Part shown: piece after piece, positions 21,750 through 58,333 of the stretch
Position numbering within the stretch: the first letter of the stretch is position 1
Layout of the letters: each line of letters begins with the position of its first letter
Assembly: GCA_030704615.1 (NCBI GenBank)
Contig: CM060734.1
Coordinates: 930,001-994,000 of the forward strand
From: Takakia lepidozioides
Lineage: Eukaryota; Plantae; Bryophyta
Direction: 5' to 3'
Length of the DNA stretch: 64,000 bases
Notes under the pieces: model-generated
Databases searched by the model: none
Told to the model about the DNA's origin: nothing
What the model saw: only the letters and a program-made list of their open reading frames with translations
Translations under genes and position numbers: made by a program

Positions 21750-21810
<61 letters not shown>

Positions 21811-21920
21811 CTAGTTCGGGGCCGTAAATGGCTAAGTCCCAGATCTGACTAGGCCCAGAACTGGAAATATGGCGCCGAAATTCAGATTTTGGTGCCAGTC
21901 AGATCTGGGACTTAGCCGTT
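20560..21920. repeat. Satellite / foldback-like array of ~60-bp subunits in alternating orientation, with poly-T tracts
   Basis: Recurring GGCTAAGTCCCAGATCTGACT and its reverse complement; GAACTGGAAAAATGGCGCC and its reverse complement; palindromic AAAATGGCGCCATTTT. Confidence 0.9.
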
Positions 21921-21946
21921 TTTAGGGTTTAGGGTTTAGGGTTTAG
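21920..21946 (+). repeat. Interstitial telomeric tract (TTTAGGG)n
   Basis: TTTAGGGTTTAGGGTTTAGGGTTTAG. Confidence 0.95.
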
Positions 21947-22810
21947 CGTCAAAACAAGTGTAGCAGTACAACGCGGATGCACCGGGTGCAAGATAAACAC
22001 GATCCGGGCAAACAAGTTTTAGGGGGGCCAGTTATGCACCCCTGGAAAAATTTCAGATCCTGTGAATCAAAGCTGAAAGGAGAGATCCTGATAGACAGGA
22101 AACTAGAATAGAAGTATGCGAGGTGTCCTGAAATGCAACTACAAACCTATGCAAGAGGCAAATGTGCGTATGAGAACTATTTCACTGGATGCACAGGAGA
22201 ATAAGAACCCTATCTCTGTTTTGCAAGAGAATGGACACACTAGGAACAACTTAGATGCAGATCTCACATGCACTACTCGAAAGGGAGTTTATGGCATAGA
22301 ATAGAAGTATGCGAGGTGTCCTGCAATGCAACTACAAACCTATGCAAGAGGCAAATGTGCGTATGAGAACTATTTCACTGGATGCACAGGAGAATAAGAA
22401 CCCTATCTTTGTTTTGCAAGAGAATGGACCACTAGGAACAACTTAGATGCAAATCTCACATACACTACTCGAAAGGGAGTTTATGGCATAGAACAGAAGT
22501 ATGCGAGGTGTCCTGAAATGCAACTGTAAACCTATATGCAAGAGGCAAATGTGCGTATGAGAACTATTTCACTGGATGCACAGGAGAATAAGAACCCTAT
22601 CTCTGTTTTGCAAGAGAATGGACACACTAGGAACAACTTAGATGCAGATCTCACATGCACTACTCGAAATGGAGTTTATGGCATGCCGTATAGACACAGA
22701 GCACATAACAATGCAATGATCTAAAGCAGGGGATACAAACGCATCTAAAACTCGACAACTTCAAAGGGTGAGACCACGAGGCAAGATCATGCAAAGTAGC
22801 GAAGCCAAAT

Positions 22811-22864
22811 CTTTATAGACCCCAGACTAGTTTCGCTCAGCGCGTGAGCTCATCAGTGGGAAAG
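22811..22864 (-). ncRNA. Type I hammerhead ribozyme (unit family)
   Basis: Minus strand TCCCA-CTGATGA-GCTCA-cgcgc-TGAGC-GAAA-CTAG-TC/TGGGG: complete core, stem I, 5-bp stem II, minimal palindromic stem III, GUC cleavage triplet. Confidence 0.9.
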
Positions 22865-22895
22865 AAAAGGAATGAGATACAAACCCCACCCCCCG

Positions 22896-22903
22896 CTTAT
22901 ATA
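22896..22903 (-). promoter_or_regulatory. TATA-box-like TATATAAG ~30-35 nt upstream of the hammerhead (present in every unit that spans this position)
   Basis: The same motif and spacing occur in the diverged unit (~42490) and the PLE (~39122, ~43827). Confidence 0.55.
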
Positions 22904-23658
22904 CTACTAGGCGTGAACTGCCTCGTGTGGACAATCTTCCAGTGGATGTCTCGTGAGGAGAAAAACCATCCAACAGATGTCTCGTACGGAGAGAATAGTC
23001 CAAAAAGTCTCGGTGGGAGAAAGTCATCCAATGGATGAAAACAAGTTCTCGACAAGAGAGAACTAGATCCAAAGAATAAAAATCATCCAAATAGTCAATT
23101 GCATATATCTCAAATACAACTAACTCCGTGAGTTTATGACTATGCAACAACCAATTATGCTGAAGTTAGAGCATGTTGTGCAAAGTCGTAAGGGCTGAAA
23201 CCACTTCGAAAGGAACGCACAACTCGTAAGAGCTTTGCACACGCAGACCATCGCGCAACCATCGTCTTGCTAAAGCCTGCAGCTGTGTTGTCCTGAATGT
23301 GTCCAACCACGATCCCCACCTTCCGACCTCCAAGACGAAACACGGCTCGGTCTTCGTATTGTTGCCTCATCACATGAATGAGCAGCTTGGTCAAAAGAAT
23401 GAAGATCAACATCTGCCTCCATTACGTGAAGGCGATTAAAGATGTGTTGCAGCTAACACTATAAGAAAGTTTAGGGTTCACATAAAGCATCAAAACAAGT
23501 GTAGCAGTACAACGCGGATGCACCGGGTGCAAGGTAAACACGATCCGGGCAAACAAGTTTTAGGGGGGCCAGTTATGCACCCCTGGAAAAATTTCAGATC
23601 ATGTGAATCGAAGCTGAAAGGAGAGATCCTGAGAGACATGAAACTAGAATAGAAGTAT

Positions 23659-25500
23659 TTGCAGTATCATCCCACCTGCCAGCTGCGGCATAGATGTTTG
23701 ATAGCAACACATAAGTCGCGCCATCCTGTTCATCCCACTAGAGGATAGATGTTGCCGTTCAGCCATCTCCACATTGCCATGGATTCTGCAGGCACCAAGC
23801 AAGGCCTTCCACACCACAACATCTGGATTTCAGTAGGCCAGTGTGGCTGCATGCAGAGAGAACACATATAAAGGTGATACTGTCCGGCTTCAAGCATTTC
23901 TTTTGCATTCCTTCAAATAGTTGCAGGACCTCCCTATGACAACCATGCTGGGCATATCCTGCGATCATCGCATTCCATGACACCACATTTCATTCAGCCA
24001 TATTGTCAAATACTCACTTTGCATCCTCACTGCACCCACATTTCACATACATGTCCACCAGGGCAGCGTCCAGAATGACATTTGGTACAGTTCCAGCTTT
24101 GATGATGTCACCATGGCGCACCTCTTTACTGGAATGCCATGCATCCATGCCTCCATGGAACACCATGCTCTGCCAGGCTTGCAAACACACACAAACATGA
24201 TATGGTCGGGCTTCACCCCTTCCCCCAGGCCTCCATCCCGCGCTCTGCTGTGCATATCCTGCAAGCATGGTGTTCCATGACACCAAATCTCATTCAGCCA
24301 TATTGTTGAACACTCCCTCCACATCCTCAATGCTCCCACATTTGGCATACATGTCTACGATGGTATTGTTCAGAATCACATCTGGTACAATTCCAGCTTT
24401 GGCGATGCAACCATGCACCTCTTTGCCCTTTTCCAGGGCTGCCAGGCTTGCACACGCAGTGCAAACGCACACAAACGTGATGTGGTCGAGCTTCACCCCT
24501 TTGCACATCATTCCAAGGCCTCCATCCCGCGCCCCTGCTGTGCATACCCTGCAAGCATTGAGTTCCATGACACCACATCTCGTTCAACCGTAGTCTTGAA
24601 AACTCCCTTCGCATCCTTAATGCACCCACATTTGGCATACATGTCCACCAGGGCAGTGTTCAGGATGACATCTGGCACAATTCCAGCTTTGACGATGTCG
24701 CCATGGGCCTCTTTCCCCTTTTCCAGAGCTGCCAGGCTTGCAAACACAAACAAATGTGATGTGGTTGGGCTTCACCCCTTCGCACATCATTTGCTTATAG
24801 GTCTGCAAAGCCTCTATCCCGCACCCTTGCTGTGCATATCATGCAATCATCGCACTCCACAACACCACATCTCGTTCAGCCATACTGTCGAACACTCCCT
24901 TAGCATCCTTGATGCACCCACATTTGACATACATGTCCACCAGGGCAGTGTTCAGCATGACACCGGGTACAATTCCAGATTTGACGATGCAACCATGGAC
25001 CTCTTTGCACTTTTCCAGGCTGCCAGGCTTGCACACGCACTGCAAACGCACACAAACATGATGTGGTTGAGCTTCACCCCTTCCCCCATCATTTGCTGAT
25101 AGGTCTCCAAAGCCCCATCCCGCGCCCCTGCTGTGCACACCCTGCAAGCATCGTGTTCCACGACACCACATCTCGTTCAGCCATAGGTTGAACACTCCCT
25201 TGGCATCCTCAATGCTCCCACATTTGGCATACATGTCCACCAGAGCAGTGTTCAGGATGACATCTGGTACAATTGATGATGTCACCATGGATCTCTTTGC
25301 CAGGGCTGCCAGACGCACTGCAAACGCACAGAAATGTTATGTGGGCGGTTTCACCCCTTCCCCCATCATTTGCTCATAGGTCTCCAAAGCCTCCATCCCG
25401 CACCCCTGCTGTGCATACCCTGCAAACATCACAATCCACCACACCACATCTCGCTCAGCCATAGTGTTCAGAATGACAGGTAATCTGACAGGCATTCACC
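23659..25500 (-). pseudogene. PLS-class PPR protein remnant with partial E domain
   Basis: Repeated VILNTALVDMYAKCG..DA..VF / DVVSWN.M.AGYAQ.G / PDSITFICVLSACSH.GL motifs and ATYVLLSNIYAAAGRWD; many frameshifts. Confidence 0.9.
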
Positions 25501-25805
25501 TTTTTGCCTCGGTTGTCCCACTGAAATGCAACTGCAAACCTATGCAAGAGGCAAATGTGCGTATGAGAACTATTTCACTGGATGCACAGGAGAATAAGAA
25601 CCCTATCTCTGTTTTGCAAGAGAATGGACACACTAGGAACAACTTAGATGCAAATCTCACATGCACTACTCGAAAGGGAGTTTATGGCATGCCGTATAGA
25701 CACAGAGCACATGATCTAAAGCAGGGGATACAAACGCATCTAAAACTCGACAACTTCAAAGGGTGAGACAACGAGGCAAGATCATGCAAAGTAGTAAAGC
25801 CAAAT

Positions 25806-25859
25806 CTTTATAGACCCCAGACTAGTTTCGCTCAGCGCGTGAGCTCATCAGTGGGAAAG
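25806..25859 (-). ncRNA. Type I hammerhead ribozyme (unit family)
   Basis: Core identical to 22811-22864. Confidence 0.9.
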
Positions 25860-25872
25860 AAAAGGAATGAGA

Positions 25873-25959
25873 TGTCGTGCGCATACATATCGCTACACAA
25901 CTACATCGCTGTCCAAACCACACCACACATATATATGCACAATAAAGTAGTCTGCCACA
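25873..25959 (-). repeat. 87-bp 3' terminal repeat (mini-LTR) of element C after the PPT (25961-25971)
   Basis: TGTGGCAG...GCACGACA on the minus strand; diverged homolog of the 85-bp repeat at 10520. Confidence 0.75.
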
Positions 25960-26218
25960 ATCGCCCCCCTAGCTGGTGGATAGGTCCCTCTAACTCTAGA
26001 TAGCTACAATATGTAATAGCCACAGCCGTCCTAAGTCCCCTATCACTGTCCCTATTGTACTCAAATTCTATAGACCAAGAGGCCGGGTACAAGAGTAGCC
26101 CCATCGTTAGTCGCCGTCTTGCAATCTGTGAATTTGAGCCAGGACTTCGTGTATTCAAGGTATCTTGTAGCTGGGCCTTGCGTTGCTTGTTAGCCTTCCA
26201 TGGTTGTATCCACTCCCA

Positions 26219-29200
26219 CTATCCAATGCATTGTGGACATAACCAATCCCCATCCGGAACCATCTCAAGAGGTGGAGTCAAGCATCCCATATGCCAACCT
26301 CTAGAGCATCGATCACACACCAGCATGGTGGCTGCCCCTTTAGCAGACCCACACAACATGCACCTCAAACCAGCAGATACCACTGCCAGGTTTGGGTCAA
26401 TCCTGCCATCGACATTCGGAAGGTGACATGGCGCACAATTACGCACATGGTCCTTCCAAGTTATGCCATCCCGACCCTCCAAGACCAAGACGCCTGAGGG
26501 CAAGACCTCTTGAACCCTCAAAATAACACGTCCTGCAGTCACATCCAGGGTCGTAGGAGCAGTTTGCTGCAGATAGACATAGTCACCAGGGTTGAATCTC
26601 CGGACCCCAGGACGATAGCCCCCACCACGTATGGTAGCATACCTCAACGTATCACGGTGTTGTGCAATGGCAAGGTTCTCGAAAGCCATGGGCATGGCTC
26701 TCTTGAACAACTCTGAACGCTGCTCACATGCACGTGCCCACACGTCCGGATCGTCAAGGTTAAGAACTGTAGCAGCTTCTCTGCGAATGGATGTAGGCAA
26801 ATCCGGCTCTCGGCCAAAGAGAAGAAAATATGGTGAGAAGGAGGCAAGTGATGCTTGTTTGCTGAACCTGTAGCCCATGGCTAACCAGGGTAACTGAAGG
26901 TCCCAATCTCCTAGGTGTCCCTTCTGCAAGCCATACTTGCGCAAACCCCTCTTTACTGTCTGAACAAATCTCTCTGCCAAGCCATCGGCCTCAGGATGAT
27001 CCCGAGAAGTGGTGCGGTGGTCTATCAAGGCCTTGTTACACAAAGCCTGAAACTCCCCAAGAACTCTCTCCCTTGGTCCGTGAGTACCTCAGCTGGAGCA
27101 CCGAATCGGCTAAGCACACAATCCAAGAATGCATACGCAACTCCCTCACTAGCCTTATCAGGCAATGGAACCAATTCAATCCACTTGGAGAAGTGCTCCA
27201 CCATCACCAACACATACTTGTTGTGGCGCATGGTCAGTGGCAACGGCCCTGCGAAGTCAAGACTCCACCTGTAGCCCAATCCCATGATCGGAAGAGGGTG
27301 CAATTGTGGAGTAGGGCGTTGAATGAAGCACGCACCCTGTCACACACCATGCACCTAGCCACAAATTGTTGCACCTCTGTGTGCATACCACGCCACCAAT
27401 ACTGCCCCTGCAGTAGACTATGAGTGCGTCGCACCCCAAAATGCCCCAACTCCTCATGGGCATGCCGCACTAACCGTGCCCGCTGTGTTGGGTGAGGCAC
27501 AATCCTCACTCGACCATCCTCCCACACTCGGAGCAGGTGTGTTTCCTCCCACTTGAACCTCTTGGCTCGTTGTAGGATCCGATCCCTCTCTTTGGCAGTC
27601 ACAGTGGCTGTAGTGTCTCCAGTGCGGAGGGAGTCCAACACAATTGAATCCTCATGTATATCTTTGGCGCCACCTTGCTCATTGCTGGCCTCAGGGTCCT
27701 CAGACACTTGATCTACAGTCATCCCTGTTGCAGGTCCAACCTGGCCTTCCGCTGCCAAGATACACAGAAATGCAGATGCATGCCATCCGGGCACCATCTC
27801 CTCGTCCGTCTCACCATGCCACCGAGCTCCAGTGTCATCCTGCTGGCTCGTGCATGGATTGCGACTCAACCCATCTGCATTGCAATTGACCAAACCCGGT
27901 CGATGCACCACCTGAAAGTCATACTCTTGAAGTATGAGTGCCCACCGTGCAAGCTTCCCCGTAAGTTTGTCTGACTCCATCAACCACTTGAGTGGTTGGT
28001 GATCCGTGACAAGGGTGAAGAGGTTGCCGTATAGATAGCACCTGAAGTGTGCCATGGCCCACACTGCAGCTAAGCATTCTCCCTCATATGAGCTATACTT
28101 AGACTCTGCAGCATTGTTCGAGCGGCTAGCATAAGCCACTACAAACTCTCTTCCCTCATCATCCACCTGTGTGAGCACCGCTCCAAGCCCCAGCATGCTC
28201 CAATCTGTATGCAGCTGGAAAGGACGCCCCCTGATAGGTCATCTCAAGATGGGCGCCGAGGTCAACCTCGCCTTGAGCTCTTGAAAAGCTTGTTCTTGCT
28301 CATCTTCCCACTGCCACTCCTGGTCCACCTTGGTCAGCTTGGTTAGAGCCTTTGCAATGGCACTAAATCCTTAACAAACCGTCTATAATAGTTTGCTAAC
28401 CCCATGAAAGCTCGAACTCGGCTCACATCCGTGGGGCGTGGAACCTGTGCAATGGACTCTACCTTAGTCTGTTGTACCCCCAATCCTCCAGGATATATCA
28501 TGTGACCCAGATACTCAATCTGGTTGTGGAAAAACTTGCACTTGCCCGGATGTAACTTCAATCCGTGCGTCCTCAAGCGCTCAAATACCCCCTGAAGGTG
28601 TCTCTCATGCTCCTCCACCGTAGCACTAAAGATGATGATGTCATCTATGTAGCACCGAGCAAACTCCACCCCTGCTAGAATCCTGTCCATGACTCTTTGA
28701 AACTTAGCGGGAGCGTTTTTAAGCCCAAATGGTAAGAACCGCCACTGGTATAGGCAATCCTTCCCGTGCTCATTGATCCCCCAGAATGCCGTCTTTTGCT
28801 TATCCGCCTCCTTGATCGGCAACTGGTGATATCCGGATCGTAAATCCAACGTGCTAAAGACCATGGAATGCCCAATGGCATCAAAGATCTCCTCTGGTGT
28901 CGGCATGGCATACCTATCGGACTTGGTCTGACGATTTACAGGCCGGTAATCACCGCACATACGTCTCTCCGTCCAATTGCCATAGACATCCTTCTTGGCT
29001 CATCACTGTGGCTGAAGCATACTCTCCACCAGAGAGCTCCACCAAACCTGCCTCCCAGAGATCTTGAGTCCTCATCTGAATCAAAGACCTCTCCATGTCA
29101 CTGTATCTATAGGGTCTCCGAAAGATTGGCGTGTCAGTGGCCAACTCAATACGGATCTCTTGACCCTTCAGTGCTCCCAAGTCTTTCAAACTGAAGGCAA

Positions 29201-29300
29201 AGCAATTCCTGTGAGCCCTCAGGAACCGCCATATACGTCGTCTCTCTCCTCCGGTGACAATGGGTCCAATGTCAGGCTCCCAATTGTGCTCCATAACTGC
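26219..29300 (-). pseudogene. RT, RNase H, integrase and PHD of element C (frameshifted)
   Basis: LPFGLKNAP, YIDDIIIFS, GLGAVLTQ..VAYASR, WSLDFAGP; PHD at 26228-26362. Confidence 0.92.
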
Positions 29301-29659
29301 AACCTTAAGTCCAGTGGGCTTAGGGATAGAGGACGCGTCCCGTGGTTGCTATGCTGCAACCTCTTGAGCAGTACTTCCTTCCTGCTCAGTCAATGACAAG
29401 GCCTCATCCTGCCCCATCATCTCATCATTGAGAACCTCCTCATCCCGAGAAGAATCCCCAACCTCATCCATCACAGCTGCTTTGGCTGCCAACTCCCTCT
29501 GAACCTCGAGCACCTCCCACGTGTGCCATGGATGTCTACACCCCGTGGTCCTCACCGACTCGCCCCCACTCGCTGCCTGTACCGTCTCGGTAGGCAGAGA
29601 GACCGTCAAGGGAAGTGCACTCCGCACTCTACGTTGCTCAGGCATAGCCAAGCTGATAA

Positions 29660-30620
29660 TCCAGGTCAAGCAATTGAGATCCATTGCTTGCCCCAACACC
29701 TGACGACGTGATGCCTCAGAAAGAGAAGGCACCGCCGTGGTCCCAGTGGAAAACCCCATAGCCCGCTCTCACTCATCGGCATTAGGCTCCACTAACTGCT
29801 GCAACTGATTATCCCACAGGAGGCCAGGTCCACCATCCCGAAAAGCATGGGATCCTGAGAAGCTGAGCAGTGTAGGTAATGCTGTCTCGTGGTTGACCCA
29901 CCCTGTTGACCACTGCCAAAGGCGAACGGTCATCGTGTCTCACACGTTGAGACTGCCTCCCTGTGTCCAAAATGCCATCCACGGTGAGGTGGGCTGACCG
30001 CTGCACCCCATCAAATGCATGCTTGAGCAGTGCGGGTGGCATCAAGTTAGTCCACCAAAGCCGTGGACGATGAGCCCGTGACCCCACTGCAGCTGCATCC
30101 AGCAACGCTGCTGACCCAAGCCACGACCGGACTTGATGCACACTGGCCATCACCCTGGCCCGAGAATCACCCATCAGTGGCACATTCTCCAAGATGTATG
30201 CTGGAGATACAGCTTGATGAAGCTGCAAGTGGGCGCAAAACCCGTACCATACCATCCTCAAAACAACACCCGTCCTTGAGTCTCCAACCCTTGCCATGCC
30301 CGGCTTGATGACATCCCTTGGTAGGGGCCAACCTGCCACTACCAGATCAATGGAGCCAACCTGCTCCAAATCCGGCGCCCCCAGCAACGAAATGTCGGCT
30401 GGCAAGGCTTGTTGGTATCCCGAACTGCAGATACTGGCAACAAAGCAGGTACTACTGCTATACAAACCAATAAAACAACTGAGCCCATTGCGCAGTGAGA
30501 CGCTTCGTGCAGTCTCATCCCTCTCCACTACAGGAACGCCTTACTTGCACACACCTCTATAGCACAGCAGCCAATCGGTGCTGATTCCCTCCAAACAAGT
30601 CCAGAAGGCAAATGCCTTCT
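29660..30620 (-). pseudogene. DNMT3/DRM-like C5 cytosine DNA methyltransferase domain within pol (frameshifted)
   Basis: Motif I LLDLFGG(I)ST; II ERDETAR; IV DLVVAGWP(x)QG; VI YILENV; VIII GSRAHRPRLWWTN; IX ERERAMGF..GTT; X SRRQVLGQAMD. Confidence 0.85.
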
Positions 30621-31149
30621 TGGATATTGCCACACAATAGGTGTGGTATCCAATGGTGACAACTGAGGTGGTCCTGGTGCAATACCGCACTCTCCCTCAC
30701 TCTACCGCACTACTCTCTCCTCCTCCTGTCCTCCCCAAAAGCCTCTACCCAGGCTTGTTGCAACCGTTCGATCACAACTGCTGCAAATCCTTGCTCGTAC
30801 CCACATGGAGTTGTGAGCAACCAAAGCAGACAACCCCACCATACCATGCATGTCAATCCTGCTTCTGCTGGAGGTGGCACTCTCTGCATGGGCATGCCTT
30901 CCAGCAACTCTCGGGCCAACTAATGCAGCTGTAAAGGCGGCTAGTGTGGCATGTTGCCCCGCGGGCAGCCGCAATAACCCCAATGAATGTTACAGGGAGC
31001 TGTGCACGACGACCATCCCCTGACTGCCATCCAGTCTATAGAATGCTGACTCCTCCCAAAAGTCCGGGTGAAGCCTATGGGTTACCTGCACTGCCCCACC
31101 AACGAGGACATCGTAAGAGACCGCGTCTGTCCACAATGCCTTGGCTCGC

Positions 31150-31430
31150 ATTACTGAGCCATCGATAGGATGATCCGGCTGCAGTCTAATGGCCAAACTG
31201 ATGTCGTGTCATGCCCCCGAGCCTGCGCTGATCCTCCCAGAGATGTCTGTATCGGAAGGACAAGGCTCCATATCCGCCTCGATAAGGCCCAACCACCTGC
31301 AATAGCACTCCTGCCCAACATCAGTGGCTGAGCTCCCGAGTCCAACAAGACCCGCAGTGGCGGTACTTCTTGCCTGCCGGTCCACTCAAAGAGAAAAATG
31401 CCATCCTGGTTTGTCAACACAAACAACTCC
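31150..31430 (-). pseudogene. Aspartic protease of element C
   Basis: RVLLDSGAQPLMLG. Confidence 0.8.
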
Positions 31431-32299
31431 AGTGTGTCACCGTGGCGCGCTCCAGGCTGGCCTAGCTGGCAGCTCCGTCAACCTGGCAGCTGCGCTTGCC
31501 ATGGCGCAGCCGTGGCAGTCTTGACCCTCAAATCCGAGGATCCCTCTGCCACTTACAACCTTCCAGTAACTCCGCAGAAGATGAAGTGACTCCCCACTCT
31601 CACAGAGTGTTGCTGCTAGTCTGAACACTGCAGCTGGTCTTACCCCCGGCCCCGGTGTCGCAATCATGGTTGCCGAGAACGTGGGGCTTTGACACACAGA
31701 GGTGGCTACTCCCAAACACAACACACCGGCTGCACTAGCCTTGGCAGCAGGTGTCAGTTGCCGCACGTGTAGCTCTCCCCAATGGCATAGAAAACCTCCA
31801 CCTCGGTAACAGTCCGGGCGAGAACTAGGTGCCATGGATGGTGTTGACACTGTCTCCGCCAAGGTGAATGACTGAGGCAGCCTCGCTCCGACGGCTTGCC
31901 TCTCCCCCGTTGTGGATCCAATCTCCACCTCTGCACCTCGTGGCTCAGGAACTCGTGCTGCTCTTGAGTCACGGCTGCAACAGACTCCACCTGCACTAGT
32001 GGTAGTGCTGCTTTGCTCCGCACCTGAATCCCATGCCTCCCATATCTCCTCCCTCAGGAGCAGGAGGTGGACCATCCCGCCTGGAGCCGGTACCGCCCTG
32101 AGCTATAGCCATGGCCAGCGAGCCTCTGCTCTAGCTGCTGAAGCCGATTGGCCATGCCTTGGTCCACACCCGGACCTCCGCGTCCTTGGCCATGTGGAGC
32201 TTGCCCTTGGCCTGCACCTCGTGCCCCGACCACCTCGTCCTCTTTGGGCTGGTCCACCTCGCCCCCGGCCACCATTATTCCCTTGGAAACTGGCCTGGG

Positions 32300-33618: not shown

Positions 33619-34140
33619 GTAACACTATAAAGCTCTAGTACTAATCTAATAGTGACACGGGTGGGCACCTGTTGCAGTTTAAGGGTCATATCCCAATGGC
33701 TCAGGGCACCTGCACCTGCATCCACCGCAAGAACTCATATGGTTGGCTGGTCATCAACCCAGCCTCACCATAGAAGAAACACTGGTGGTCTTGCTGGTCA
33801 TCACTCCAGCCTCACCACCGACAGCATACTCTAGGATTGACTGGTGATCAAATCCGGCCTAATCCCTATGAAAGCAAGCGCCCACACAAAACCAACACAT
33901 GGCGCACAGTCAAGCATGCAGGTGTTGGGGGGGGATCCAAACACAAGAAATCAAAACATCAACACCCCCACACCAAAATCCAGCTGCAATGCTGATCCTG
34001 CAGAATATCCCAGCCCAAAACCCCGGACTGACTGGCCTCCACCAAGAGAGGCTTTGGCAACTACGAGTACAAGGTAATGAAAATAGTACAGAGATGGAGG
34101 GGAAGAATAGAAGCCCGCCCAAGCAAGATCTAATCCTGAT

Positions 34141-42860: not shown

Positions 42861-42923
42861 AGTTTAGGGTTTAGGACTCCCTCAAAGCTTAGAGCTTGAG
42901 TATTAGGGTTTAGGGTTTAGGGT
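42861..42923 (+). repeat. Telomeric tract interrupted by ~27 nt of non-telomeric sequence
   Basis: GTTTAGGGTTTAGG-actccctcaaagcttagagcttgagta-TTAGGGTTTAGGGTTTAGGG. Confidence 0.85.
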
Positions 42924-43739: not shown

Positions 43740-43795
43740 GGTGTTTTATTCCAAACAAGTTTCGCTTGATTGCTCAAGCTCATCAGTGGAACACC
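43740..43795 (-). ncRNA. Type I hammerhead ribozyme (PLE family)
   Basis: Identical to 39035-39090. Confidence 0.9.
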
Positions 43796-44046
43796 AAGAG
43801 ATGAAGTCCTAAGAGCCAAGCCTATCCTTATATACTAGAAAAGCACCCTCACTATGTGCAAACGATATGGGATAATTCCCAAGGCAATAATAATGCCACT
43901 AAAGCACTAATTTAGCCTCCAAGTCAAGACTGCATTAATTAGTCAATGGTCCAAATTAAATTGTTGGAACCCTTTGACTTTAACATCAACACTAGGGCTA
44001 TCAAAGAGGCAAAATTAATAATGCTAGGGACATTTGCACTACAAAA

Positions 44047-45189: not shown

Positions 45190-45214
45190 GGTTTAGGGTT
45201 TAGGGTTTAGGGTT
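45190..45214 (+). repeat. Telomeric tract capping the RT truncation
   Basis: GGTTTAGGGTTTAGGGTTTAGGGTTT. Confidence 0.95.
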
Positions 45215-48200: not shown

Positions 48201-48343
48201 GAGAGAATAGTCCAAAAAATCTCGGTGGAGAAAGTCATCCAGTGGATGAAAACAAGTTCTCGACAAGAGAGAACTAGATCCAAAGAATAAAAATCATCCA
48301 AATAGTCAATTGCACATCTCTCAAATACAACTAACTCCGTGAG
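45215..48343 (-). mobile_element. Array 3: ~2.7 units of ~1155 bp; hammerheads at ~45701-45754, 46859-46912, 48020-48073
   Basis: Head-to-tail units joined at AAAGTTTAGGGTTCACAT; all three share a stem II variant. Confidence 0.9.
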
Positions 48344-48387
48344 TTTAGGGTTTAGGGTTTTAGGGTTAGGGTTTAGGGTTTAGGGTT
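48343..48387 (+). repeat. Telomeric tract
   Basis: About 6 TTTAGGG-type units. Confidence 0.95.
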
Positions 48388-51300
48388 CACATAAAGCGTC
48401 AAAACAAGTGTAGCAGTACAACGCGGATGCACCTGGTGCAAGATAAACACGATCCGGGCAAACGAGTTTTAGGGGGGGCCAGTTATGCACCCTGGAAAAA
48501 TTTCAGATCCTGTGAATCAAAGCTGAAAGGAGAGATCCTGAGAGACAGGAAACTAGAATAGATGTATGCAAGGTGTCCTGAAATGCAACTGCAAACCTAT
48601 GCAAGAGGCAATGTGCGTATGAGAACTATTTCACTGGATGCACAGGAGAATAAGAACCCTATCTCTGTTTTGCAAGAGAATGGACACACTAGGAACAACT
48701 TAGATGCAGATCTCACATGCACTACTCGAGAGGGAGTTTATGGCATGTCGTATAGACACAGAGCACATAACAATGCAATGATCTAAAGCAGGGGATACAA
48801 ACGCATCTAAAACTCGACAACTTCAAAGGGTGAGACCACGAGGCAAGATCATGCAAAGTAGTGAAGCCAAATCTTTATAGACCCCAGACTAGTTTCGCTC
48901 AGCGCGTGAGCTCATCAGTGGGAAAGAAAATGAATGAGATACAAACCCCCCCCCCCCCGCTTATATACTACTAGGAGTGAACTGCCCGTGTGGACAATCT
49001 TCCAGTGGATGTCTCGTGAGGAGAAAAACCATCCAACAAATGTCTCGTACGGAGAGAATAGTCCAAAAAGTCTCGGTGGGAGAAAGTCATCCAGTGGATG
49101 AAAACAGTTCTCGACAAAGAGAGACTAGATCCAAAGAATAAAAATCATCCAAATAGTCAATTGCATATCTCTAAAATACAACTAACTCCGTGAGTTTATG
49201 ACTATGCAACAACCAATTATGCTGAAGTTAGAGCATGTCGTGCAAAGTCGTAAGGGCTGAAACCACTTCGAAAGGAACGCACAACTCGTAAGAGCTTTGC
49301 ACACGCAGACCATCGCGCAACCATCGTCTTGCTAAAGCATGCAGCTGTGTTGTCCTGAACGTGTCCAACCACGATCCCACCTTCCGACCTCCAAGACGAA
49401 ACACGGCTCGGTCTTCGTATTGTTGCCTCATCACATGAATGAGCAGCTTGGTCAAAGAATGAAGATCAACATCTGCCTCCATTACGTGAAGGCGATTAAA
49501 GATGTGTTGCAGCTAACACTTATAGAAAGTTTAGGGTTCACATAAAGCGTCAAAACAAGTGTAGCAGTACAACGCGGATGCACCGGGTGCAAGATAAACA
49601 CGATCCGGGCAAACAAGTTTTAGGGGGGGCCAGTTATGCACCCCTGGAAAAATTTCAGATCCTGTGAATCAAACCTGAAAGGAGAGATCCTGAGAGACAG
49701 GAAACTAGAATAGAAGTATGCGAGGTGTCCTGAAATGCAACTGCAAACCTATGCAAGAGGCAAATGTGCGTATGAGAACTATTTCACTGGATGCACAGGA
49801 GAATAAGAACCCTATCTCTGTTTTGCAAGAGAATGGACACACTAGGAACAACTTAGATGCAGATCTCACATGCACTACTCGAGAGGGAGTTTATGGCATG
49901 TCGTATAGACACAGAGCACATAACAATGCAATGATCTAAAGCAGGGGATACAAACGCATCTAAAACTCGACAACTTCAAAGGTGAGACCACGAGGCAAGA
50001 TCATGCAAAGTAGTGAAGCCAAATCTTTATAGACCCCAGACTAGTTTCGCTCAGCGCGTGAGCTCATCAGTGGGAAAGAAAAGGAATGAGATACAAACCC
50101 CACCCCCCGCTTATATACTACTAGGAGTGAACTGCCTCGTGTGGACAATCTTCCAGTGGATGTCTCGTGAGGAGAAAAACCATCCACAGATGTCTCGTAC
50201 GGAGAGAATAGTCCAAAAAAGTCTCGGTGGGAGAAAGTCATCCAGTGGATGAAAACAAGTTCTCGACAAGAGAGAACTAGATCCAAAGAATAAAAATCAT
50301 CCAAAAGTCAATTGCATATCTCTCAAATACAACTAACTCCGTGAGTTTATGACTATGCAACAACCAATTATGCTGAAGTTAGAGCATGTTGTGCAAAGTC
50401 GTAAGGGCTGAAACCACTTCGAAAGGAACGCACAACTCGTAAGAGCTTTGCACACGCAGACCATCGCGCAACCATCGTCTTGCTAAAGCCTGCAGCTGTG
50501 TTGTCCTGAACGTGTCCAACCACGATCCCCACCTTCCGACCTCCAAGACGAAACACGGCTCGGTCTTCGTATTGTTGCCTCATCACATGAATGAGCAGCT
50601 TGGTCAAAAAATGAAGATCAACATCTGCCTCCATTACGTGAAGGCGATTAAAGATGTGTTGCAGCTAACACTATAAGAAAGTTTAGGGTTCACATAAAGC
50701 GTCAAAACAAGTGTAGCAGTACAACGCGGATGCACCGGGTGCAAGATAAACACGATCCGGGCAAACAAGTTTTGGGGGCCAGTTATGCACCCCTGGAAAA
50801 ATTTCAGATCCTGTGAATCAAACCTGAAAGGAGAGATCCTGAGAGACAGGAAACTAGAATAGAAGTATGCGAGGTGTCCTGAAATGCAACTGCAAACCTA
50901 TGCAAGAGGCAAATGTGCGTATGAGAACTATTTCACTGGATGCACAGGAGAATAAGAACCCTATCTCTGTTTTGCAAGAGAATGGACACACTAGGAACAA
51001 CTTAGATGTAGATCTCACATGCACTACTCGAGAGGGAGTTATGGCATGTCGTATAGACACAGAGCACAAATACAATGCATGATCTAAAGCAGGGGATACA
51101 AACGCATCTAAAACTCGACAACTTCAAAGGGTGAGACCACGAGGCAAGATCATGCAAAGTAGTGAAGCCAAATCTTTATAGACCCCAGACTAGTTTCGCT
51201 CAGCGCGTGAGCTCATCAGTGGGAAAGAAAAGGAATGAGATACAAACCCCCCCCCCCGCTTATATACTACTACTAGGAGTGAACTGCCTCGTGTGGACAA

Positions 51301-51500
51301 TCTTCCAGTGGATGTCTCGTGAGGAGAAAAACCATCCAAGATGTCTCGTACGGAGAGAATAGTCCAAAAAGTCTCGGTGGGAGAAAGTCATCCCAGTGGA
51401 TGAAAACAAGTTCTCGACAAGAGAGAACTAGATCCAAAGAATAAAAATCATCCAAATAGTCAATTGCATATCTCTCAAATACAACTAACTCCGTGAGTTT
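48388..51500 (-). mobile_element. Array 4: ~2.7 units; hammerheads at ~48873-48926, 50025-50078, 51174-51227
   Basis: Same unit; ends at the same GAGTTTA site as array 3. Confidence 0.9.
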
Positions 51501-51638
51501 ATGGTTAGGGTTTTAGGTTAGGGTTTATGGTTTAGGGTTCACATAAAGCTCGAAAACAAGGTTTAGGGTTTAGGGTTTAGGGTTTAGGGGTTAGGGTTAG
51601 GGTTTAGGGGTTAGGGTTAGGGTTTAGGGTTTAGGGTT
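51497..51638 (+). repeat. Telomeric tract containing a ~21-nt abortive unit start (51540-51560)
   Basis: TTTAGGG variants flank CACATAAAGCTCGAAAACAAG. Confidence 0.9.
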
Positions 51639-54600
51639 CACATAAAGCGTCAAAACAAGTGTAGCAGTACAACGCGGATGCACCGGGTGCAAGATAAACA
51701 CGATCCGGGCAAACAAGTTTTAGGGGGGCCAGTTATGCACCCCTGGAAAAATTTCAGATCCTGTGAATCAAACCTGAAAGGAGAGATCCTGAGAGACAGG
51801 AAACTAGAATAGAAATATGCGAGGTGTCCTGAAATGCAACTGCAAACCTATGCAAGAGGCAAATGTGCGTATGAGAACTATTTCACTGGATGGACACAGG
51901 AGAATAAGAACCCTATCTCTGTTTTGCAAGAGAATGGACACACTAGGAACAACTTAGATGCAGATCTCACATGCACTACTCGAAAGGGAGTTTATGGCAT
52001 AGAATAGAAGTATGCGAGGTGTCCTGAAATGCAACTGCAAACTTATGCAAGAGGCAAATGTGCGTATGAGAACTATTTCACTGGATGCACAGGAGAATAA
52101 GAACCCTATCTCTGTTTTGCAAGAGAATGGACACACTAGGAACAACTTAGATGCAGATCTCACATGCACTACTCGAAAGGGAGTTTATGGCATGCCGTAT
52201 AGACACAGAGCACATAACAATGCAATGATCTAAAGCAGGGGATACAAACGCATCTAAAACTCGACAACTTCAAAGGGTGAGACCACGAGGCAAGATCATG
52301 CAAAGTAGTGAAGCCAAATCTTTATAGACCCCAGACTAGTTTCGCTCAGCGCGTGAGCTCATCAGTGGGAAAGAAAAGGAATGAGATACAAACCCCACCC
52401 CCCGCTTATATACTACTAGGAGTGAACTGCCTCGTGTGGACAATCTTCCAGTGGATGTCTCGTGAGGAGAAAAACCATCCAAGAGATGTCTCGTACGGAG
52501 AGAATAGTCCAAAAAGTCTCGGTGGGAGAAAGTCATCCAGTGGATGAAAACAAGTTCTCGACAAGAGAGAACTAGATCCAAAGAATAAAAATCATCCAAA
52601 TAGTCAATTGCATATCTCTCAAATACAACTAACTCCGTGAGTTTATGACTATGCAACAACCAATTATGCTGAAGTTAGAGCATGTTGTGCAAAGTCGTAA
52701 GGGCTGAAACCACTTCGAAAGGAACGCACAACTCGTAAGAGCTTTGCACACGCAGACCATCGCGCAACCATCGTCTTGCTAAAGCCTGCAGCTGTGTTGT
52801 CCTGAACGTGACCAACCACGATCCCCACCTTCCGACCTCCAAGACGAAACACGGCTCGGTCTTCGTATTGTTGCCTCATCACATGAATGAGCAGCTTGGT
52901 CAAAAGAATGAAGATCAACATCTGCCTCCATTACGTGAAGGCGATTAAAGATGTGTTGCAGCTAACACTGTAAGAAAGTTTAGGGTTCACATAAAGCGTC
53001 AAAACAAGTGTAGCAGTACAACGCGGATGCACCGGGTGCAAGATAAACACGATCCGGGCAAACAAGTTTTAGGGGGGCCAGTTATGCACCCCTGGAAAAA
53101 TTTCAGATCCTGTGAATCAAACCTGAAAGGAGAGATCCTGAGAGACAGGAAACTAGAATAGAAATATGCGAGGTGTCCTGAAATGCAACTGCAAACCTAT
53201 GCAAGAGGCAAATGTGCGTATGAGAACTATTTCACTGGATGCACAGGAGAATAAGAACCCTATCTCTGTTTTGCAAGAGAATGGACACACTAGGAACAAC
53301 TTAGATGCAGATCTCACATGCACTACTCGAAAGGGAGTTTATGGCATAGAATAGAAGTATGCGAGGTGTCCTGAAATGCAACTGCAAACTTATGCAAGAG
53401 GCAAATGTGCGTATGAGAACTATTTCACTGGATGCAGGAGAATAAGAACCCTATCTCTGTTTTGCAAGAGAATGGACACACTAGGAACAACTTAGATGCA
53501 GATCTCACATGCACTACTCGAAAGGGAGTTTATGGCATGCCGTATAGACACAGAGCACATAACAATGCAATGATCTAAAGCAGGGGATACAAACGCATCT
53601 AAAACTCGACAACTTCAAAGGGTGAGACCACGAGGCAAGATCATGCAAAGTAGTGAAGCCAAATCTTTATAGACCCCAGACTAGTTTCGCTCAGCGCGTG
53701 AGCTCATCAGTGGGAAAGAAAAGGAATGAGATACAAACCCACCCCCCGCTTATATACTACTAGGAGTGAACTGCCTCGTGTGGACAATCTTCCAGTGGAT
53801 GTCTCGTGAGGAGAAAAACCATCCAAGAGATGTCTCGTACGGAGAGAATAGTCCAAAAAGTCTCGGTGGGAGAAAGTCATCCAGTGGATGAAAACAAGTT
53901 CTCGACAAGAGAGAACTAGATCCAAAGAATAAAAATCATCCAAATAGTCAATTGCATATCTCTCAAATACAACTAACTCCGTGAGTTTATGACTATGCAA
54001 CAACCAATTATGCTGAAGTTAGAGCATGTTGTGCAAAGTCGTAAGGGCTGAAACCACTTCGAAAGGAACGCACAACTCGTAAGAGCTTTGCACACGCAGA
54101 CCATCGCGCAACCATCGTCTTGCTAAAGCCTGCAGCTGTGTTGTCCCGAACGTGACCAACCACGATCCCCACCTTCCGACCTCCAAGACGAAACACGGCT
54201 CGGTCTTCGTATTGTTGCCTCATCACATGAATGAGCAGCTTGGTCAAAAGAATGAAGATCAACATCTGCCTCCATTACGTGAAGGCGATTAAAGATGTGT
54301 TGCAGCTAACACTGTAAGAAAGTTTAGGGTTCACATAAAGCGTCAAAACAAGTGTAGCAGTACAACGCGGATGCACCGGGTGCAAGATAAACACGATCCG
54401 GGCAAACAAGTTTTAGGGGGGCCAGTTATGCACCCCTGGAAAAATTTCAGATCCTGTGAATCAAACCTGAAAGGAGAGATCCTGAGAGACAGGAAACTAG
54501 AATAGAAATATGCGAGGTGTCCTGAAATGCAACTGCAAACCTATGCAGAGGCAAATGTGCGTATGAGAACTATTTCACTGGATGCACAGGAGAATAAGAA

Positions 54601-57600
54601 CCCTATCTCTGTTTTGCAAGAGAATGGACACACTAGGAACAACTTAGATGCAGATCTCACATGCACTACTCGAAAGGGAGTTTATGGCATAGAATAGAAG
54701 TATGCGAGGTGTCCTGAAATGCAACTGCAAACTTATGCAAGAGGCAAATGTGCGTATGAGAACTATTTCACTGGATGCACAGGAGAATAAGAACCCTATC
54801 TCTGTTTTGCAAGAGAATGGACACACTAGGAACAACTTAGATGCAGATCTCACATGCACTACTCGAAAGGGAGTTTATGGCATGCCGTATAGACACAGAG
54901 CACATAACAACAATGCAATGATCTAAAGCAGGGGATACAAACGCATCTAAAACTCGACAACTTCAAAGGGTGAGACCACGAGGCAAGATCATGCAAAGTA
55001 GTGAAGCCAAATCTTTATAGACCCCAGACTAGTTTCGCTCAGCGCGTGAGCTCATCAGTGGGAAAGAAAAGGAATGAGATACAAACCCCACCCCCCGCTT
55101 ATATACTACTAGGAGTGAACTGCCTCGTGTGGACAATCTTCCAGTGGATGTCTCGTGAGGAGAAAAACCATCCAAGAGATGTGTCTCGTACGGAGAGAAT
55201 AGTCCAAAAAGTCTCGGTGGGAGAAAGTCATCCAGTGGATGAAAACAAGTTCTCGACAAGAGAGAACTAGATCCAAAGAATAAAAATCATCCAAATAGTC
55301 AATTGCATATCTCTCAAATACAACTAACTCCGTGAGTTTGACTATGCAACAACCAATTATGCTGAAGTTAGAGCATGTTGTGCAAAGTCGTAAGGGCTGA
55401 AACCACTTCGAAATGAACGCACAACTCGTAAGAGCTTTGCACACGCAGACCATCGCGCAACCACCATCGTCTTGCTAAAGCCTGCAGCTGTGTTGTCCCG
55501 AACGTGACCAACCACGATCCCCACCTTCCGACCTCCAAGACGAAACACGGCTCGGTCTTCGTATTGTTGCCTCATCACATGAATGAGCAGCTTGGTCAAA
55601 AGAATGAAGATCAACATCTGCCTCCATTACGTGAAGGCGATTAAAGATGTGTTGCAGCTAACACTGTAAGAAAGTTTAGGGTTCACATAAAGCGTCAAAA
55701 CAAGTGTAGCAGTACAACGCGGATGCACCGGGTGCAAGATAAAACACGATCCGGGCAAACAAGTTTTAGGGGGCCAGTTATGCACCCCTGGAAAAATTTC
55801 AGATCCTGTGAATCAAACCTGAAAGGAGAGATCCTGAGAGACAGGAAACTAGAATAGAAATATGCGAGGTGTCCTGAAATGCAACTGCAAACCTATGCAA
55901 GAGGCAAATGTGCGTATGAGAACTATTTCACTGGATGCACAGGAGAATAAGAACCCTATCTCTGTTTTGCAAGAGAATGGACACACTAGGAACAACTTAG
56001 ATGCAGATCTCACATGCACTACTCGAAAGGGAGTTTATGGCATAGAATAGAAGTATGCGAGGTGTCCTGAAATGCAACTGCAAACTTATGCAAGAGGCAA
56101 ATGTGCGTATGAGAACTATTTCACTGGATGCACAGGAGAATAAGAACCCTATCTCTGTTTTGCAAGAGAATGGACACACTAGGAACAACTTAGATGCAGA
56201 TCTCACATGCACTACTCGAAAGGGAGTTTATGGCATGCCGTATAGACACAGAGCAACACATAACAATGCAATGATCTAAAGCAGGGGATACAAACGCATC
56301 TAAAACTCGACAACTTCAAAGGGTGAGACCACGAGGCAAGATCATGCAAAGTAGTGAAGCCAAATCTTTATAGACCCCAGACTAGTTTCGCTCAGCGCGT
56401 GAGCTCATCAGTGGGAAAGAAAAGGAATGAGATACAAACCCCACCCCACCCGCTTATATACTACTAGGAGTGAACTGCCTCGTGTGGACAATCTTCCAGT
56501 GGATGTCTCGTGAGGAGAAAAACCATCCAAGAGATGTCTCGTACGGAGAGAATAGTCCAAAAAGTCTCGGTGGGAGAAAGTCATCCAGTGGATGAAAACA
56601 AGTTCTCGACAAGAGAGAACTAGATCCAAAGAATAAAAATCATCCAAATAGTCAATTGCATATCTCTCAAATACAACTAACTCCGTGAGTTTATGACTAT
56701 GCAACAACCAATTATGCTGAAGTTAGAGCATGTTGTGCAAAGTCGTAAGGGCTGAAACCACTTCGAAATGAACGCACAACTCGTAAGAGCTTTGCACACG
56801 CAGACCATCGCGCAACCATCGTCTTGCTAAAGCCTGCAGCTGTGTTGTCCGAACGTGACCAACCACGATCCCCACCTTCCGACCTCCAAGACGAAACACG
56901 GCTCGGTCTTCGTATTGTTGCCTCATCACATGAATGAGCAGCTTGGTCAAAAGAATGAAGATCAACATCTGCCTCCATTACGTGAAGGCGATTAAAGATG
57001 TGTTGCAGCTAACACTGTAAGAAAGTTTAGGGTTCACATAAAGCGTCAAAACAAGTGTAGCAGTACAACGCGGATGCACCGGGTGCAAGATAAACACGAT
57101 CCGGGCAAACAAGTTTTAGGGGGGCCAGTTATGCACCCCTGGAAAAATTTCAGATCCTGTGAATCAAACCTGAAAGGAGAGATCCTGAGAGACAGGAAAC
57201 TAGAATAGAAATATGCGAGGTGTCCTGAAATGCAACTGCAAACCTATGCAAGAGGCAAATGTGCGTATGAGAACTATTTCACTGGATGCACAGGAGAATA
57301 AGAACCCTATCTCTGTTTTGCAAGAGAATGGACACACTAGGAACAACTTAGATGCAGATCTCACATGCACTACTCGAAAGGGAGTTTATGGCATAGAATA
57401 GAAGTATGCGAGGTGTCCTGAAATGCAACTGCAAACTTATGCAAGAGGCAAATGTGCGTATGAGAACTATTTCACTGGATGCACAGGAGAATAAGAACCT
57501 ATCTCTGTTTTGCAAGAGAATGGACACACTAGGAACAACTTAGATGCAGATCTCACATGCACTACTCGAAAGGGAGTTTATGGCATGCCGTATAGACACA

Positions 57601-58333
57601 GAGCACATAACAATGCAATGATCTAAAGCAGGGGATACAAACGCATCTAAAACTCGACAACTTCAAAGGGTGAGACCACGAGGCAAGATCATGCAAAGTA
57701 GTGAAGCCAAATCTTTATAGACCCCAGACTAGTTTCGCTCAGCGCGTGAGCTCATCAGTGGGAAAGAAAAGAATGAGATACAAACCCCACCCCCCGCTTA
57801 TATACTACTAGGAGTGAACTGCCTCGTGTGGACAATCTTCCAGTGGATGTCTCGTGAGGAGAAAAACCATCCAAGAGATGTCTCGTACGGAGAGAATAGT
57901 CCAAAAAGTCTCGGTGGGAGAAAGTCATCCAGTGGATGAAAACAAGTTCTCGACAAGAGAGAACTAGATCCAAAGAATAAAAATCATCCAAATAGTCAAT
58001 TGCATATCTCTCAAATACAACTAACTCCGTGAGTTTATGACTATGCAACAACCAATTATGCTGAAGTTAGAGCATGTTGTGCAAAGTCGTAAGGGCTGAA
58101 ACCACTTCGAAATGAACGCACAACTCGTAAGAGCTTTGCACACGCAGACCATCGCGCAACCATCGTCTTGCTAAAGCCTGCAGCTGTGTTGTCCCGAACG
58201 TGACCAACCACGATCCCCACCTTCCGACCTCCAAGACGAAACACGGCTCGGTCTTCGTATTGTTGCCTCATCACATGAATGAGCAGCTTGGTCAAAAAGA
58301 ATGAAGATCACATCTGCCTCCATTACGTGAAGG
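51639..58333 (-). mobile_element. Array 5: ~5 units of ~1345 bp (two 193-bp sub-repeats each); hammerheads at ~52320-52373, 53665-53718, 55013-55066, 56366-56419, 57713-57766
   Basis: Head-to-tail units running into the assembly gap. Confidence 0.9.

What the first reader, a model, noticed from the sequence alone, without database searches (positions are those of the whole stretch)
21920..58333. Telomere-extending system of a Penelope-like RT plus hammerhead-ribozyme non-coding elements (telomeric retrozymes)
Seen: ~36 kb made of blocks separated by short TTTAGGG tracts. Every block is antisense to the G-rich strand, starts at a fixed point right after telomere repeats, and ends truncated and capped by new repeats. 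Blocks are either a PLE RT element or non-coding units, and all three families carry TATA plus a type I hammerhead. Known: endonuclease-deficient PLEs (Athena, Coprina and relatives in Selaginella) attach to chromosome ends in this polarity, and minimal type I hammerheads typify PLEs and retrozymes. Inference: the chromosome 3' overhang primes reverse transcription of these RNAs, alternating with telomerase. The dominant cargo is a non-autonomous ribozyme RNA. I do not know of a described telomere-targeted retrozyme family in plants.
Basis: partly seen in the sequence, partly recalled or inferred. Interest (0 to 1): 0.93.

Follow-up and report, generated by a model that had tools for sequence, protein, structure and literature searches.

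The report
Telomere-primed ribozyme passenger of plant retroelements
A plant chromosome carries a stack of retroelements that attach themselves to telomere repeats, and most of the stack is a protein-free, ribozyme-bearing passenger cut down from one of them, a combination whose parts are known separately but that I did not find described together.

Summary
Largely real, with corrections. All blocks are antisense to the G-rich strand (61 TTTAGGG on +, no CCCTAAA), start at a telomere-complementary site, and carry TATA plus a type I hammerhead. But 13.5 of the 36 kb are later inserts (Ty3, PPR piece), the stack ends at a scaffold gap inside a >62 Mb piece, and only one family (A, 1.15-1.55 kb, ~18 kb) is non-autonomous: B and C are truncated copies of two endonuclease-less Penelope-like elements (PLEs) of the Selaginella/Cryptomeria clade. 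A is an internal-deletion derivative of a B-like PLE. An independent sample assembles A (1.17 kb) and full C (4.05 kb) as cycles, so the priming site lies inside the hammerhead-to-hammerhead monomer, as in relatives, just before ORF1. Best model: telomeric 3' ends prime PLE reverse transcription internally on circular or uncleaved multimeric RNA; telomerase caps each truncated copy. A second telomere-complementary site is dual-coded in the RT gene of many relatives. Telomeric EN-less PLEs, non-autonomous PLE tandems and MoTeR2 are known; their union in a land plant was not found in searchable papers. The scan noted the same system on other pieces of this genome. Terminal location and RNA circles untested.

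The parts
20551..21919 (.). Palindromic repeat array; the stack begins exactly at the 3' foot of a ~100-nt hairpin (candidate break site)
   Evidence: -61 kcal/mol fold
21920..21941 (+). First telomere tract (3 repeats)
21927..38133 (-). A array I: I.1 (21927-23468, 3 sub-repeats), I.2 (23469-38078, interrupted twice), I.3 (55 bp, truncated)
23659..25520 (-). Decayed PLS-class PPR fragment replacing part of A unit I.2, same polarity as A, no TSD
25873..37482 (-). Ty3-type retrotransposon (RT, RNase H, integrase, PHD) inserted later into A, TG..CA ends, 4-bp TSD
38134..38216 (+). Degenerate telomere tract
38209..39472 (-). Family C solo pseudo-LTR: from the terminal priming site to the in-ORF telomere-like site; hammerhead cleavage site 39049
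39460..39507 (+). Telomere tract
39500..41854 (-). A array II: II.0 (truncated, 3 sub-repeats), direct jump to II.1 (mutated hammerhead), II.2 truncated
41855..41880 (+). Telomere tract
41869..42903 (-). Family B: 3' end of a second EN-less PLE (RT C-terminal codons 42761-42901, TATA, hammerhead cleavage 42413), ~70% like A
42903..42922 (+). Telomere tract overlapping the 15-nt priming site of C
42908..45189 (-). Family C PLE, 5'-truncated: RT, stop, USE-like box 43863-43873, TATA 43827-43834, hammerhead cleavage 43754, 830-nt leader, priming site
44047..45192 (-). RT ORF fragment, 381 aa, motifs FDVESLY, GTAMGS, RYIDD, thumb; no endonuclease
44167..44177 (-). In-ORF telomere-complementary site encoding T-L-N-P
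45189..45216 (+). Telomere tract capping the truncated RT
45205..48347 (-). A array III, 2 full units + 1 truncated, own haplotype; hammerheads 45715, 46873, 48034
48343..48387 (+). Telomere tract
48378..51503 (-). A array IV, 2 full units + 1 truncated, mosaic haplotypes; hammerheads 48887, 50039, 51188
51498..51638 (+). Two variant telomere tracts enclosing a 31-bp abortive A start (51530-51560)
51629..58333 (-). A array V, 5 near-identical units with 2 sub-repeats, cut by the gap; hammerheads 52334, 53679, 55027, 56380, 57727
52978..52987 (-). Example of A's built-in 10-nt telomere-complementary priming site (1.4 repeats), one per monomer
   Evidence: 0.4% of shuffles reach 10 nt
58334..58833 (.). 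500-N scaffold gap ending the contig

Best explanation
The stack was built left to right at a DNA end bearing telomere repeats. Two autonomous endonuclease-less PLE families (B, C; ~4-kb monomers with ORF1 + RT) and one non-autonomous derivative (A) share a design: TATA, type I hammerhead, a leader, then 10-15 nt complementary to TTTAGGG just before ORF1. The single-stranded G-rich 3' end anneals to that internal site, the PLE RT copies backwards through the ribozyme and promoter into the preceding monomer (possible only on a circle or an uncleaved multimer), synthesis stops or the end is later cut back, telomerase adds a few repeats, and the cycle restarts. A is a B-like element that lost ORF1 and nearly all of RT, gained 193-bp sub-repeats, and is copied in trans, giving 2-5 monomers per event. 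Shown: anatomy, polarity, homologies, cyclic assembly, clade. Inferred: priming, RNA form (circle ~45%, linear multimer ~55%), telomerase as the capping enzyme, which RT serves A.
For: Single polarity of all blocks and repeats. RT nests in a 100%-supported clade of EN-less RTs with Selaginella, Ginkgo and Cryptomeria proteins. Cryptomeria contigs show the same chains: the site after the hammerhead is followed either by ORF1 or by telomere repeats; site-to-ATG 18-25 nt in five relatives. Independent sample X5 assembles C as a 4053-nt cycle through the priming site and A as a 1174-nt cycle; B continues into an RT, and B's sequence beyond its priming site matches A's (13-nt identity, 20/24 in register). 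A and B align also upstream of TATA (score 73 vs 27+-3.6). A telomere-type T or deletion at the junction occurs in 3 of 7 array starts and 0 of 11 internal junctions (p=0.04). Units cluster by array (0.84% within, 1.9% between, 0/20000 permutations). No TSDs; several truncation points end in telomere-like microhomology. Stem III is palindromic in A, B and relatives, stems I/II covary. Internal initiation by a PLE RT is shown in vitro (PMC11167929); telomere attachment of EN-less PLEs is established (PMC8557442, PMC6431247).
Against: Not at an assembled chromosome end. Tracts are only ~15-80 bp, against 150-1250 bp in Cryptomeria, hard to square with priming on normal telomeres. No contig spans this locus's own junctions, and no raw reads were available. 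Array IV is mosaic and arrays III and IV end at almost the same base, as recombination would give. An A-like copy without telomere repeats at its start exists in X7/X10. Cleavage, circles and transcription strand untested; 13 of 14 intact A ribozymes is not enough to show selection.
Confidence: 0.75

Rival explanations
1. One retrotransposition seeds each block, but the head-to-tail A arrays are multiplied at DNA level (break-induced replication with D-loops, unequal exchange), so A is partly a subtelomeric satellite.
For: Array-specific haplotypes and identical internal junctions are equally expected; the same pattern in MoTeR2 arrays was assigned to BIR (10.1101/845669). Arrays III and IV have the same 2+1 shape and share two variants; sub-repeat number varies 1-3.
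Against: Every array still starts at the priming site with start-specific junction bases; III carries eight variants absent from IV; an abortive 31-bp start between two tracts is a reverse-transcription-like product.
Confidence: 0.3
2. The locus is a healed internal break or a fossil end, not a working telomere: a cruciform-prone palindrome broke, telomerase and PLE RTs extended the end in a short burst, and it was later rejoined. The elements are parasites of unprotected ends and do not maintain telomeres.
For: First junction at the foot of a hairpin; very short tracts; interior scaffold position; a Ty3 and a PPR piece in the proximal array show it has lain internal for some time; other scan notes report interstitial chains (unchecked).
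Against: The contig ends inside the most homogeneous array, pointing outward, as a mis-joined terminal contig would; units V.1-V.4 differ by 0.0-0.2%.
Confidence: 0.45
3. The elements are inserted into existing internal telomere repeats by an endonuclease supplied in trans (TRAS/SART/MoTeR style).
For: Would explain short tracts on both sides and interior sites.
Against: No endonuclease in this RT or its ~600-aa full-length relatives; 10-15 nt of primer complementarity is built into each RNA; caps follow arbitrary truncation points.
Confidence: 0.07
4. The chain is an assembly artefact stitched through shared telomere repeats and repeat units.
For: Indel noise in arrays III-V; no independent contig spans the block order.
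Against: Each family and the A-A junction are recovered in an independent study; tracts differ in sequence and length; arrays have distinct haplotypes; Cryptomeria shows the same architecture.
Confidence: 0.05

Closest known systems
EN-deficient telomeric PLEs (Coprina clade incl. Selaginella Sm1/Sm2; Athena) - Gladyshev & Arkhipova 2007, as summarised in PMC8557442, PMC12477314, PMC13159263
   Same: RT without GIY-YIG, 5' end facing the telomere, 5' truncation capped by repeats, reverse-complement telomere stretch, hammerhead in the pseudo-LTR (PMC4209133 for Selaginella). B and C are members.
   Different: Here a non-autonomous derivative forms multi-unit arrays in the chain; hammerheads are minimal/dimeric type; tracts are very short. 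I could not read the 2007 paper (not held), so whether it already reports the in-ORF site is from memory only (probably yes).
Terminons of bdelloid rotifers (PMC6431247)
   Same: Chains at telomeres, 5' truncation by short repeat stretches, captured host genes, secondary TE insertions.
   Different: There the telomere-complementary stretch is immediately next to the hammerhead at the 3' end; here it is 540-830 nt downstream and inside the monomer; units are 1-4 kb, not up to 40 kb.
Non-LTR retrozymes of animals (PMC7229834; bioRxiv 10.64898/2026.07.22.740005)
   Same: Non-coding tandem repeats with one type I hammerhead per unit, derived from PLE pseudo-LTRs.
   Different: Units 150-450 nt, tied to EN+ PLEs, no telomere priming site, mostly metazoan; A is 1.15-1.55 kb, from an EN-less PLE, in a land plant; circles not shown here.
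Non-autonomous Chlamys elements such as MRC1 (PMC8557442)
   Same: Green-lineage non-autonomous PLEs with multicopy head-to-tail insertions.
   Different: EN+ clade, dispersed, not telomere-primed.
MoTeR1/MoTeR2 of Magnaporthe (10.1101/845669); HeT-A of Drosophila (own knowledge)
   Same: Autonomous plus RT-less partner in polar head-to-tail telomeric arrays with short interstitial tracts, truncations and LTR-element insertions.
   Different: LINE-type RT with endonuclease, no ribozyme, each copy separated by a tract; not PLE.
Plant LTR retrozymes (PMC4918200 abstract; PMC7229834)
   Same: Non-autonomous, hammerhead-bearing, plant.
   Different: Type III hammerhead, LTRs, PBS/PPT, 4-bp TSD, Ty3-driven; none of these apply.

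Membership tests
EN-deficient telomeric PLE (families B, C) | PLE-type RT | tested here: met
   50-71% identity to plant PLE RTs with DKN motif in full-length relatives; clade support 100
EN-deficient telomeric PLE (families B, C) | No GIY-YIG endonuclease after the thumb | tested here: met
   ORF stops 45 codons after GATLNP; relatives end likewise, unlike P0097
EN-deficient telomeric PLE (families B, C) | Reverse-complement telomere stretch and hammerhead in the pseudo-LTR | tested here: met
EN-deficient telomeric PLE (families B, C) | 5' truncation capped by telomere repeats, single polarity | tested here: met
EN-deficient telomeric PLE (families B, C) | Located at or near chromosome ends | tested here: inconclusive
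   ends at scaffold gap inside a >62 Mb piece
EN-deficient telomeric PLE (families B, C) | Placement in the named Coprina clade against reference elements | not tested
   Repbase references not available; only nearness to a Selaginella protein shown
Non-LTR retrozyme (family A) | Two or more consecutive tandem units with complete type I hammerhead | tested here: met
   arrays III, IV, V; 13 of 14 cores intact
Non-LTR retrozyme (family A) | No protein-coding capacity | tested here: met
   no RT or ORF1 hit, only short open frames
Non-LTR retrozyme (family A) | Derived from a PLE pseudo-LTR | tested here: met
   homology to family B on both sides of the junction
Non-LTR retrozyme (family A) | Small unit of 150-450 nt | tested here: not met
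   1150-1550 nt
Non-LTR retrozyme (family A) | Expressed as self-cleaved linear and circular monomers | not testable with these tools
   only contigs; parts of A lie in two runs guessed to be RNA
Plant LTR retrozyme | Type III hammerhead in LTRs, PBS/PPT, 4-bp TSD | tested here: not met
   type I topology, no LTR pair, no TSD
Terminon | Telomere-complementary stretch immediately adjacent to the hammerhead | tested here: not met
   536-831 nt apart in B and C, ~500-900 in A

The most novel reading that the evidence does not exclude
The PLE RT and the A RNA form a two-component, telomerase-like machine: a TERT-sister enzyme uses a separate non-coding circular RNA with a 1.4-repeat template to cap and extend unprotected chromosome ends, writes the short variant repeat tracts itself by slipping on that template, and contributes to telomere upkeep in this plant.
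Probability: 0.08. Interest if true: 0.92.

Novelty: new variant of a known kind. Interest (0 to 1): 0.62.

Why it matters
It joins two lines that have been separate: telomere-attaching EN-less PLEs and hammerhead retrozymes. A needs only a promoter, a ribozyme and a 10-nt telomere-pairing site to be copied onto DNA ends by an enzyme that is the sister group of telomerase, so it defines a minimal RNA substrate for an in vitro test of how PLEs prime, whether the hammerhead/circle is needed (open since the 2014 circular-template proposal and questioned in vitro in 2024), and how a trans-acting RT-RNA pair could lead to telomerase. The side result that the same clade forms telomere chains in a conifer, with a telomere-pairing site dual-coded in the RT gene, widens a group that a 2025 review knew in plants only from Selaginella.

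Tried and rejected
Rfam scans do not detect the minimal hammerheads above noise; miRNA hits are the palindromic array. Pfam copy here has no model for the RT fragment. The 184-aa plus-strand ORFs at 38439 and 43144 and the ORFs across the N gap have no family and were dismissed. ORF1 proteins of relatives find nothing in A, B or C, so A's retention of the ORF1 start is inferred from position only. The idea that C's 1.26-kb block is its own non-coding circle got no support: no joint from the in-ORF site back to the priming site in any run; it is a solo pseudo-LTR as in Cryptomeria. A simple proximal-old to distal-young gradient is not clean (I 2.1%, III 0.7%, IV 1.9%, V 0.4%; part of IV and V.5 is indel noise). 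The GGCCCCC motif upstream of priming sites in A, B, C and of the in-ORF site is not significant in local alignments. Circular A is only mildly structured (z=-2.2) and the priming site is not notably exposed. JGI metagenomes hold neither the ribozyme pattern nor the RT. Gladyshev 2007 and Arkhipova 2017 are not held. The careful tree did not finish; the quick one is cited.
Full report
Observation. The span 21920-58333 is strongly polar: TTTAGGG occurs 61 times on + and its complement never. Self-comparison and mapping resolve it into five arrays of one unit (A), one copy of a related sequence (B), two copies of a PLE (C), and short telomere tracts of about 15-80 bp. A core-plus-stems search finds 16 intact type I hammerheads, all on the minus strand, each 46-53 nt behind a TATA box; a 17th in unit II.1 has a core mutation. 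Rfam does not score them. Of the 36.4 kb, 11.6 kb is a Ty3-type element with a 4-bp target duplication inside A unit I.2 and 1.9 kb a decayed PPR piece in the same unit; A makes up about 18 kb. The last array runs into a 500-N gap, and the piece continues for more than 62 Mb, so a chromosome end is not demonstrated. The source is a land plant (telomere motif, PLS-class PPR); its name is coded.

The autonomous parts. ORF 44047-45192 (-) is the C-terminal 381 aa of an RT. Its relatives are ~600-aa proteins without GIY-YIG, among them Selaginella moellendorffii (50%), Cryptomeria (55%) and Ginkgo proteins; the alignment shows PLE motifs and a common stop position, unlike an amphibian EN+ protein, and a quick tree puts it in a 100%-supported clade with them. 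Laying public contigs on 41810-46380 settles both: in X5, a sample from another study, B runs on into RT-like sequence, and C assembles as a 4053-nt cycle that goes from the truncation point through 1774 further letters back to the priming site at 42908. So full C is a ~4-kb head-to-tail monomer, and the telomere-pairing site is inside it.

Relatives confirm the design. In Cryptomeria contigs L002 and L011 and in cyclic contigs L003, L004 and L008, the order is RT, stop, (TATA), hammerhead, leader of 108-428 nt, telomere-complementary site, ORF1 start 18-25 nt later. Where a chain is anchored, telomere repeats replace ORF1 exactly at that site. Stems I and II vary with compensation between families, and stem III is a 6-nt palindrome in nearly all (imperfect in C), the dimer-dependent form described for PLEs (PMC4209133). 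A second telomere-complementary site lies in the RT frame 44-51 codons before the stop; the rare Leu codon needed for it is used in all eight genes checked that carry the peptide motif (related sequences, not independent). Block 38209-39472 and a Cryptomeria 655-bp block end exactly there, which makes it the far border of the pseudo-LTR.

Family A. A has no coding remnant detectable by tblastn but is ~70% like B from the priming site to the TATA box, aligns further up to B's RT stop (score 73 against 27+-3.6), and on the other side of its junction matches what X5 shows beyond B's priming site (13 identical nt, 20 of 24 in register). It is therefore a B-like PLE with ORF1 and RT deleted, plus 1-3 copies of a 193-bp sub-repeat. 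X5 and X1 both show the A-to-A junction; X5 assembles A as a 1174-nt cycle. The single repeat at each internal junction is part of the monomer: 10 nt pairing with telomeric DNA, reached by 0.4% of shuffles.

Mechanism. Shown: every block begins at the pairing site (A 10, B 12, C 15 nt), crosses the ribozyme and promoter, and ends at varied points, mostly followed by repeats, without target duplications. Three of seven A starts carry a telomere-type base or a short deletion at the junction and none of eleven internal junctions does (p=0.04, weak), as expected if the primer supplies those bases. Units group by array (0.84% against 1.9%, none of 20000 permutations). Inferred: a G-rich 3' end anneals to the internal site, the PLE RT copies more than one monomer, telomerase caps the product. 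Because the copy passes the cleavage site, the template must be a circle or an uncleaved multimer. The circular route was proposed for PLEs in 2014 (PMC4209133); a purified EN+ PLE initiates internally and does not need cleavage in vitro (PMC11167929), so I hold the two about even. DNA-level amplification remains a real contributor: identical junctions in MoTeR2 arrays were explained by break-induced replication (10.1101/845669), array IV is mosaic, and III and IV stop at nearly the same base, though that base ends a 5-nt telomere microhomology.

Where it happened is open. The contig ends in the most uniform array, facing outward, which fits a mis-joined chromosome end. But the first junction sits at the foot of a long hairpin, tracts are far shorter than in Cryptomeria, and scan notes report interstitial chains elsewhere (unchecked), which fits healing of breaks. 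One A-like copy without telomere repeats appears in X7 and X10, and in X1 contigs of C outweigh A, so A's dominance is local and its telomere link may not be exclusive. Only contigs were available: junction order at this locus, transcription strand, cleavage and circles are untested.

Comparison. B and C are new members of the telomere-attaching EN-less PLEs known from Selaginella, fungi and rotifers (PMC8557442, PMC12477314, PMC13159263, PMC6431247). A works like a non-LTR retrozyme, meeting the tandem-hammerhead and PLE-origin criteria (PMC7229834; 10.64898/2026.07.22.740005) but not the size range, and it differs by a telomere priming site and an EN-less parent. Non-autonomous PLE tandems exist in Chlamydomonas, and RT-less telomeric partners exist for LINE-type elements (MoTeR2, HeT-A). 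Eight paper searches found no telomere-primed non-autonomous PLE in a plant, but the two primary papers on telomeric PLEs could not be read.

Verdict. Real, mostly as described, a new variant of a known kind. Interest 0.62. The telomerase-like reading (RT plus separate template RNA maintaining ends) is not excluded but has about 8% probability.

Noticed in passing
window 44167-44177; L001 11616, L002 3564, L003 2125, L008 3486, L010 3433, L011: In all 8 RT genes checked that encode G-x-x-L-N-P, the codons read xxC CTA AAC CC, i.e. a telomere-complementary site, although CTA is only 3-9% of their Leu codons. About half of the clade has the motif. Solo pseudo-LTRs end there in this window and in Cryptomeria: probably a programmed telomerase seed that keeps promoter and ribozyme ahead of the next ORF1.
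   Followed up: yes
L002 and L011 (Cryptomeria japonica contigs): Head-to-tail 4.3-kb EN-less PLE units and chains separated by 150-1250 bp telomere tracts; not found described in the papers searched.
   Followed up: partly
L002 3767-3865, 8106-8204, 12445-12543: A 5S rRNA-derived segment sits upstream of the hammerhead in each Cryptomeria unit; L010 ends in a similar segment.
   Followed up: partly
window 43827-43873; L006 ~3520-3560: snRNA-type USE-like box 28 nt before TATA in family C, with a U5-6 run ~20 nt after the cleavage site: a Pol III transcript would be a ~100-nt free hammerhead that could partner the dimeric ribozyme in trans. Speculative.
   Followed up: partly
window 25873-37482: 11.6-kb Ty3-type element with TG..CA ends and 4-bp TSD but no internal LTR pair by self-BLAST; PHD after the integrase; an inverted related copy at 7673-10607 shares the same terminus.
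   Followed up: partly
window 23659-25520: PPR fragment ending at the E motif, in A's polarity, replacing part of the sub-repeats without TSD: template switch onto a host RNA or repair filler.
   Followed up: partly
window 20551-21919: Array of ~70-145 bp palindromic units with poly-T spacers; gives spurious miRNA hits.
   Followed up: partly
window 11111-19278: 250-bp direct repeats built of 10-bp tandem units flank an 8-kb element with integrase followed by long unnamed ORFs.
   Followed up: no
window 58834-64000: Beyond the gap, a 1724-bp direct repeat at 99.8% identity and a 247-bp inverted repeat; possibly an assembly duplication.
   Followed up: no
runs X7 and X10 on window 45216-45636: A diverged A-like copy flanked by unrelated sequence, without telomere repeats at its start, in two samples.
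   Followed up: no
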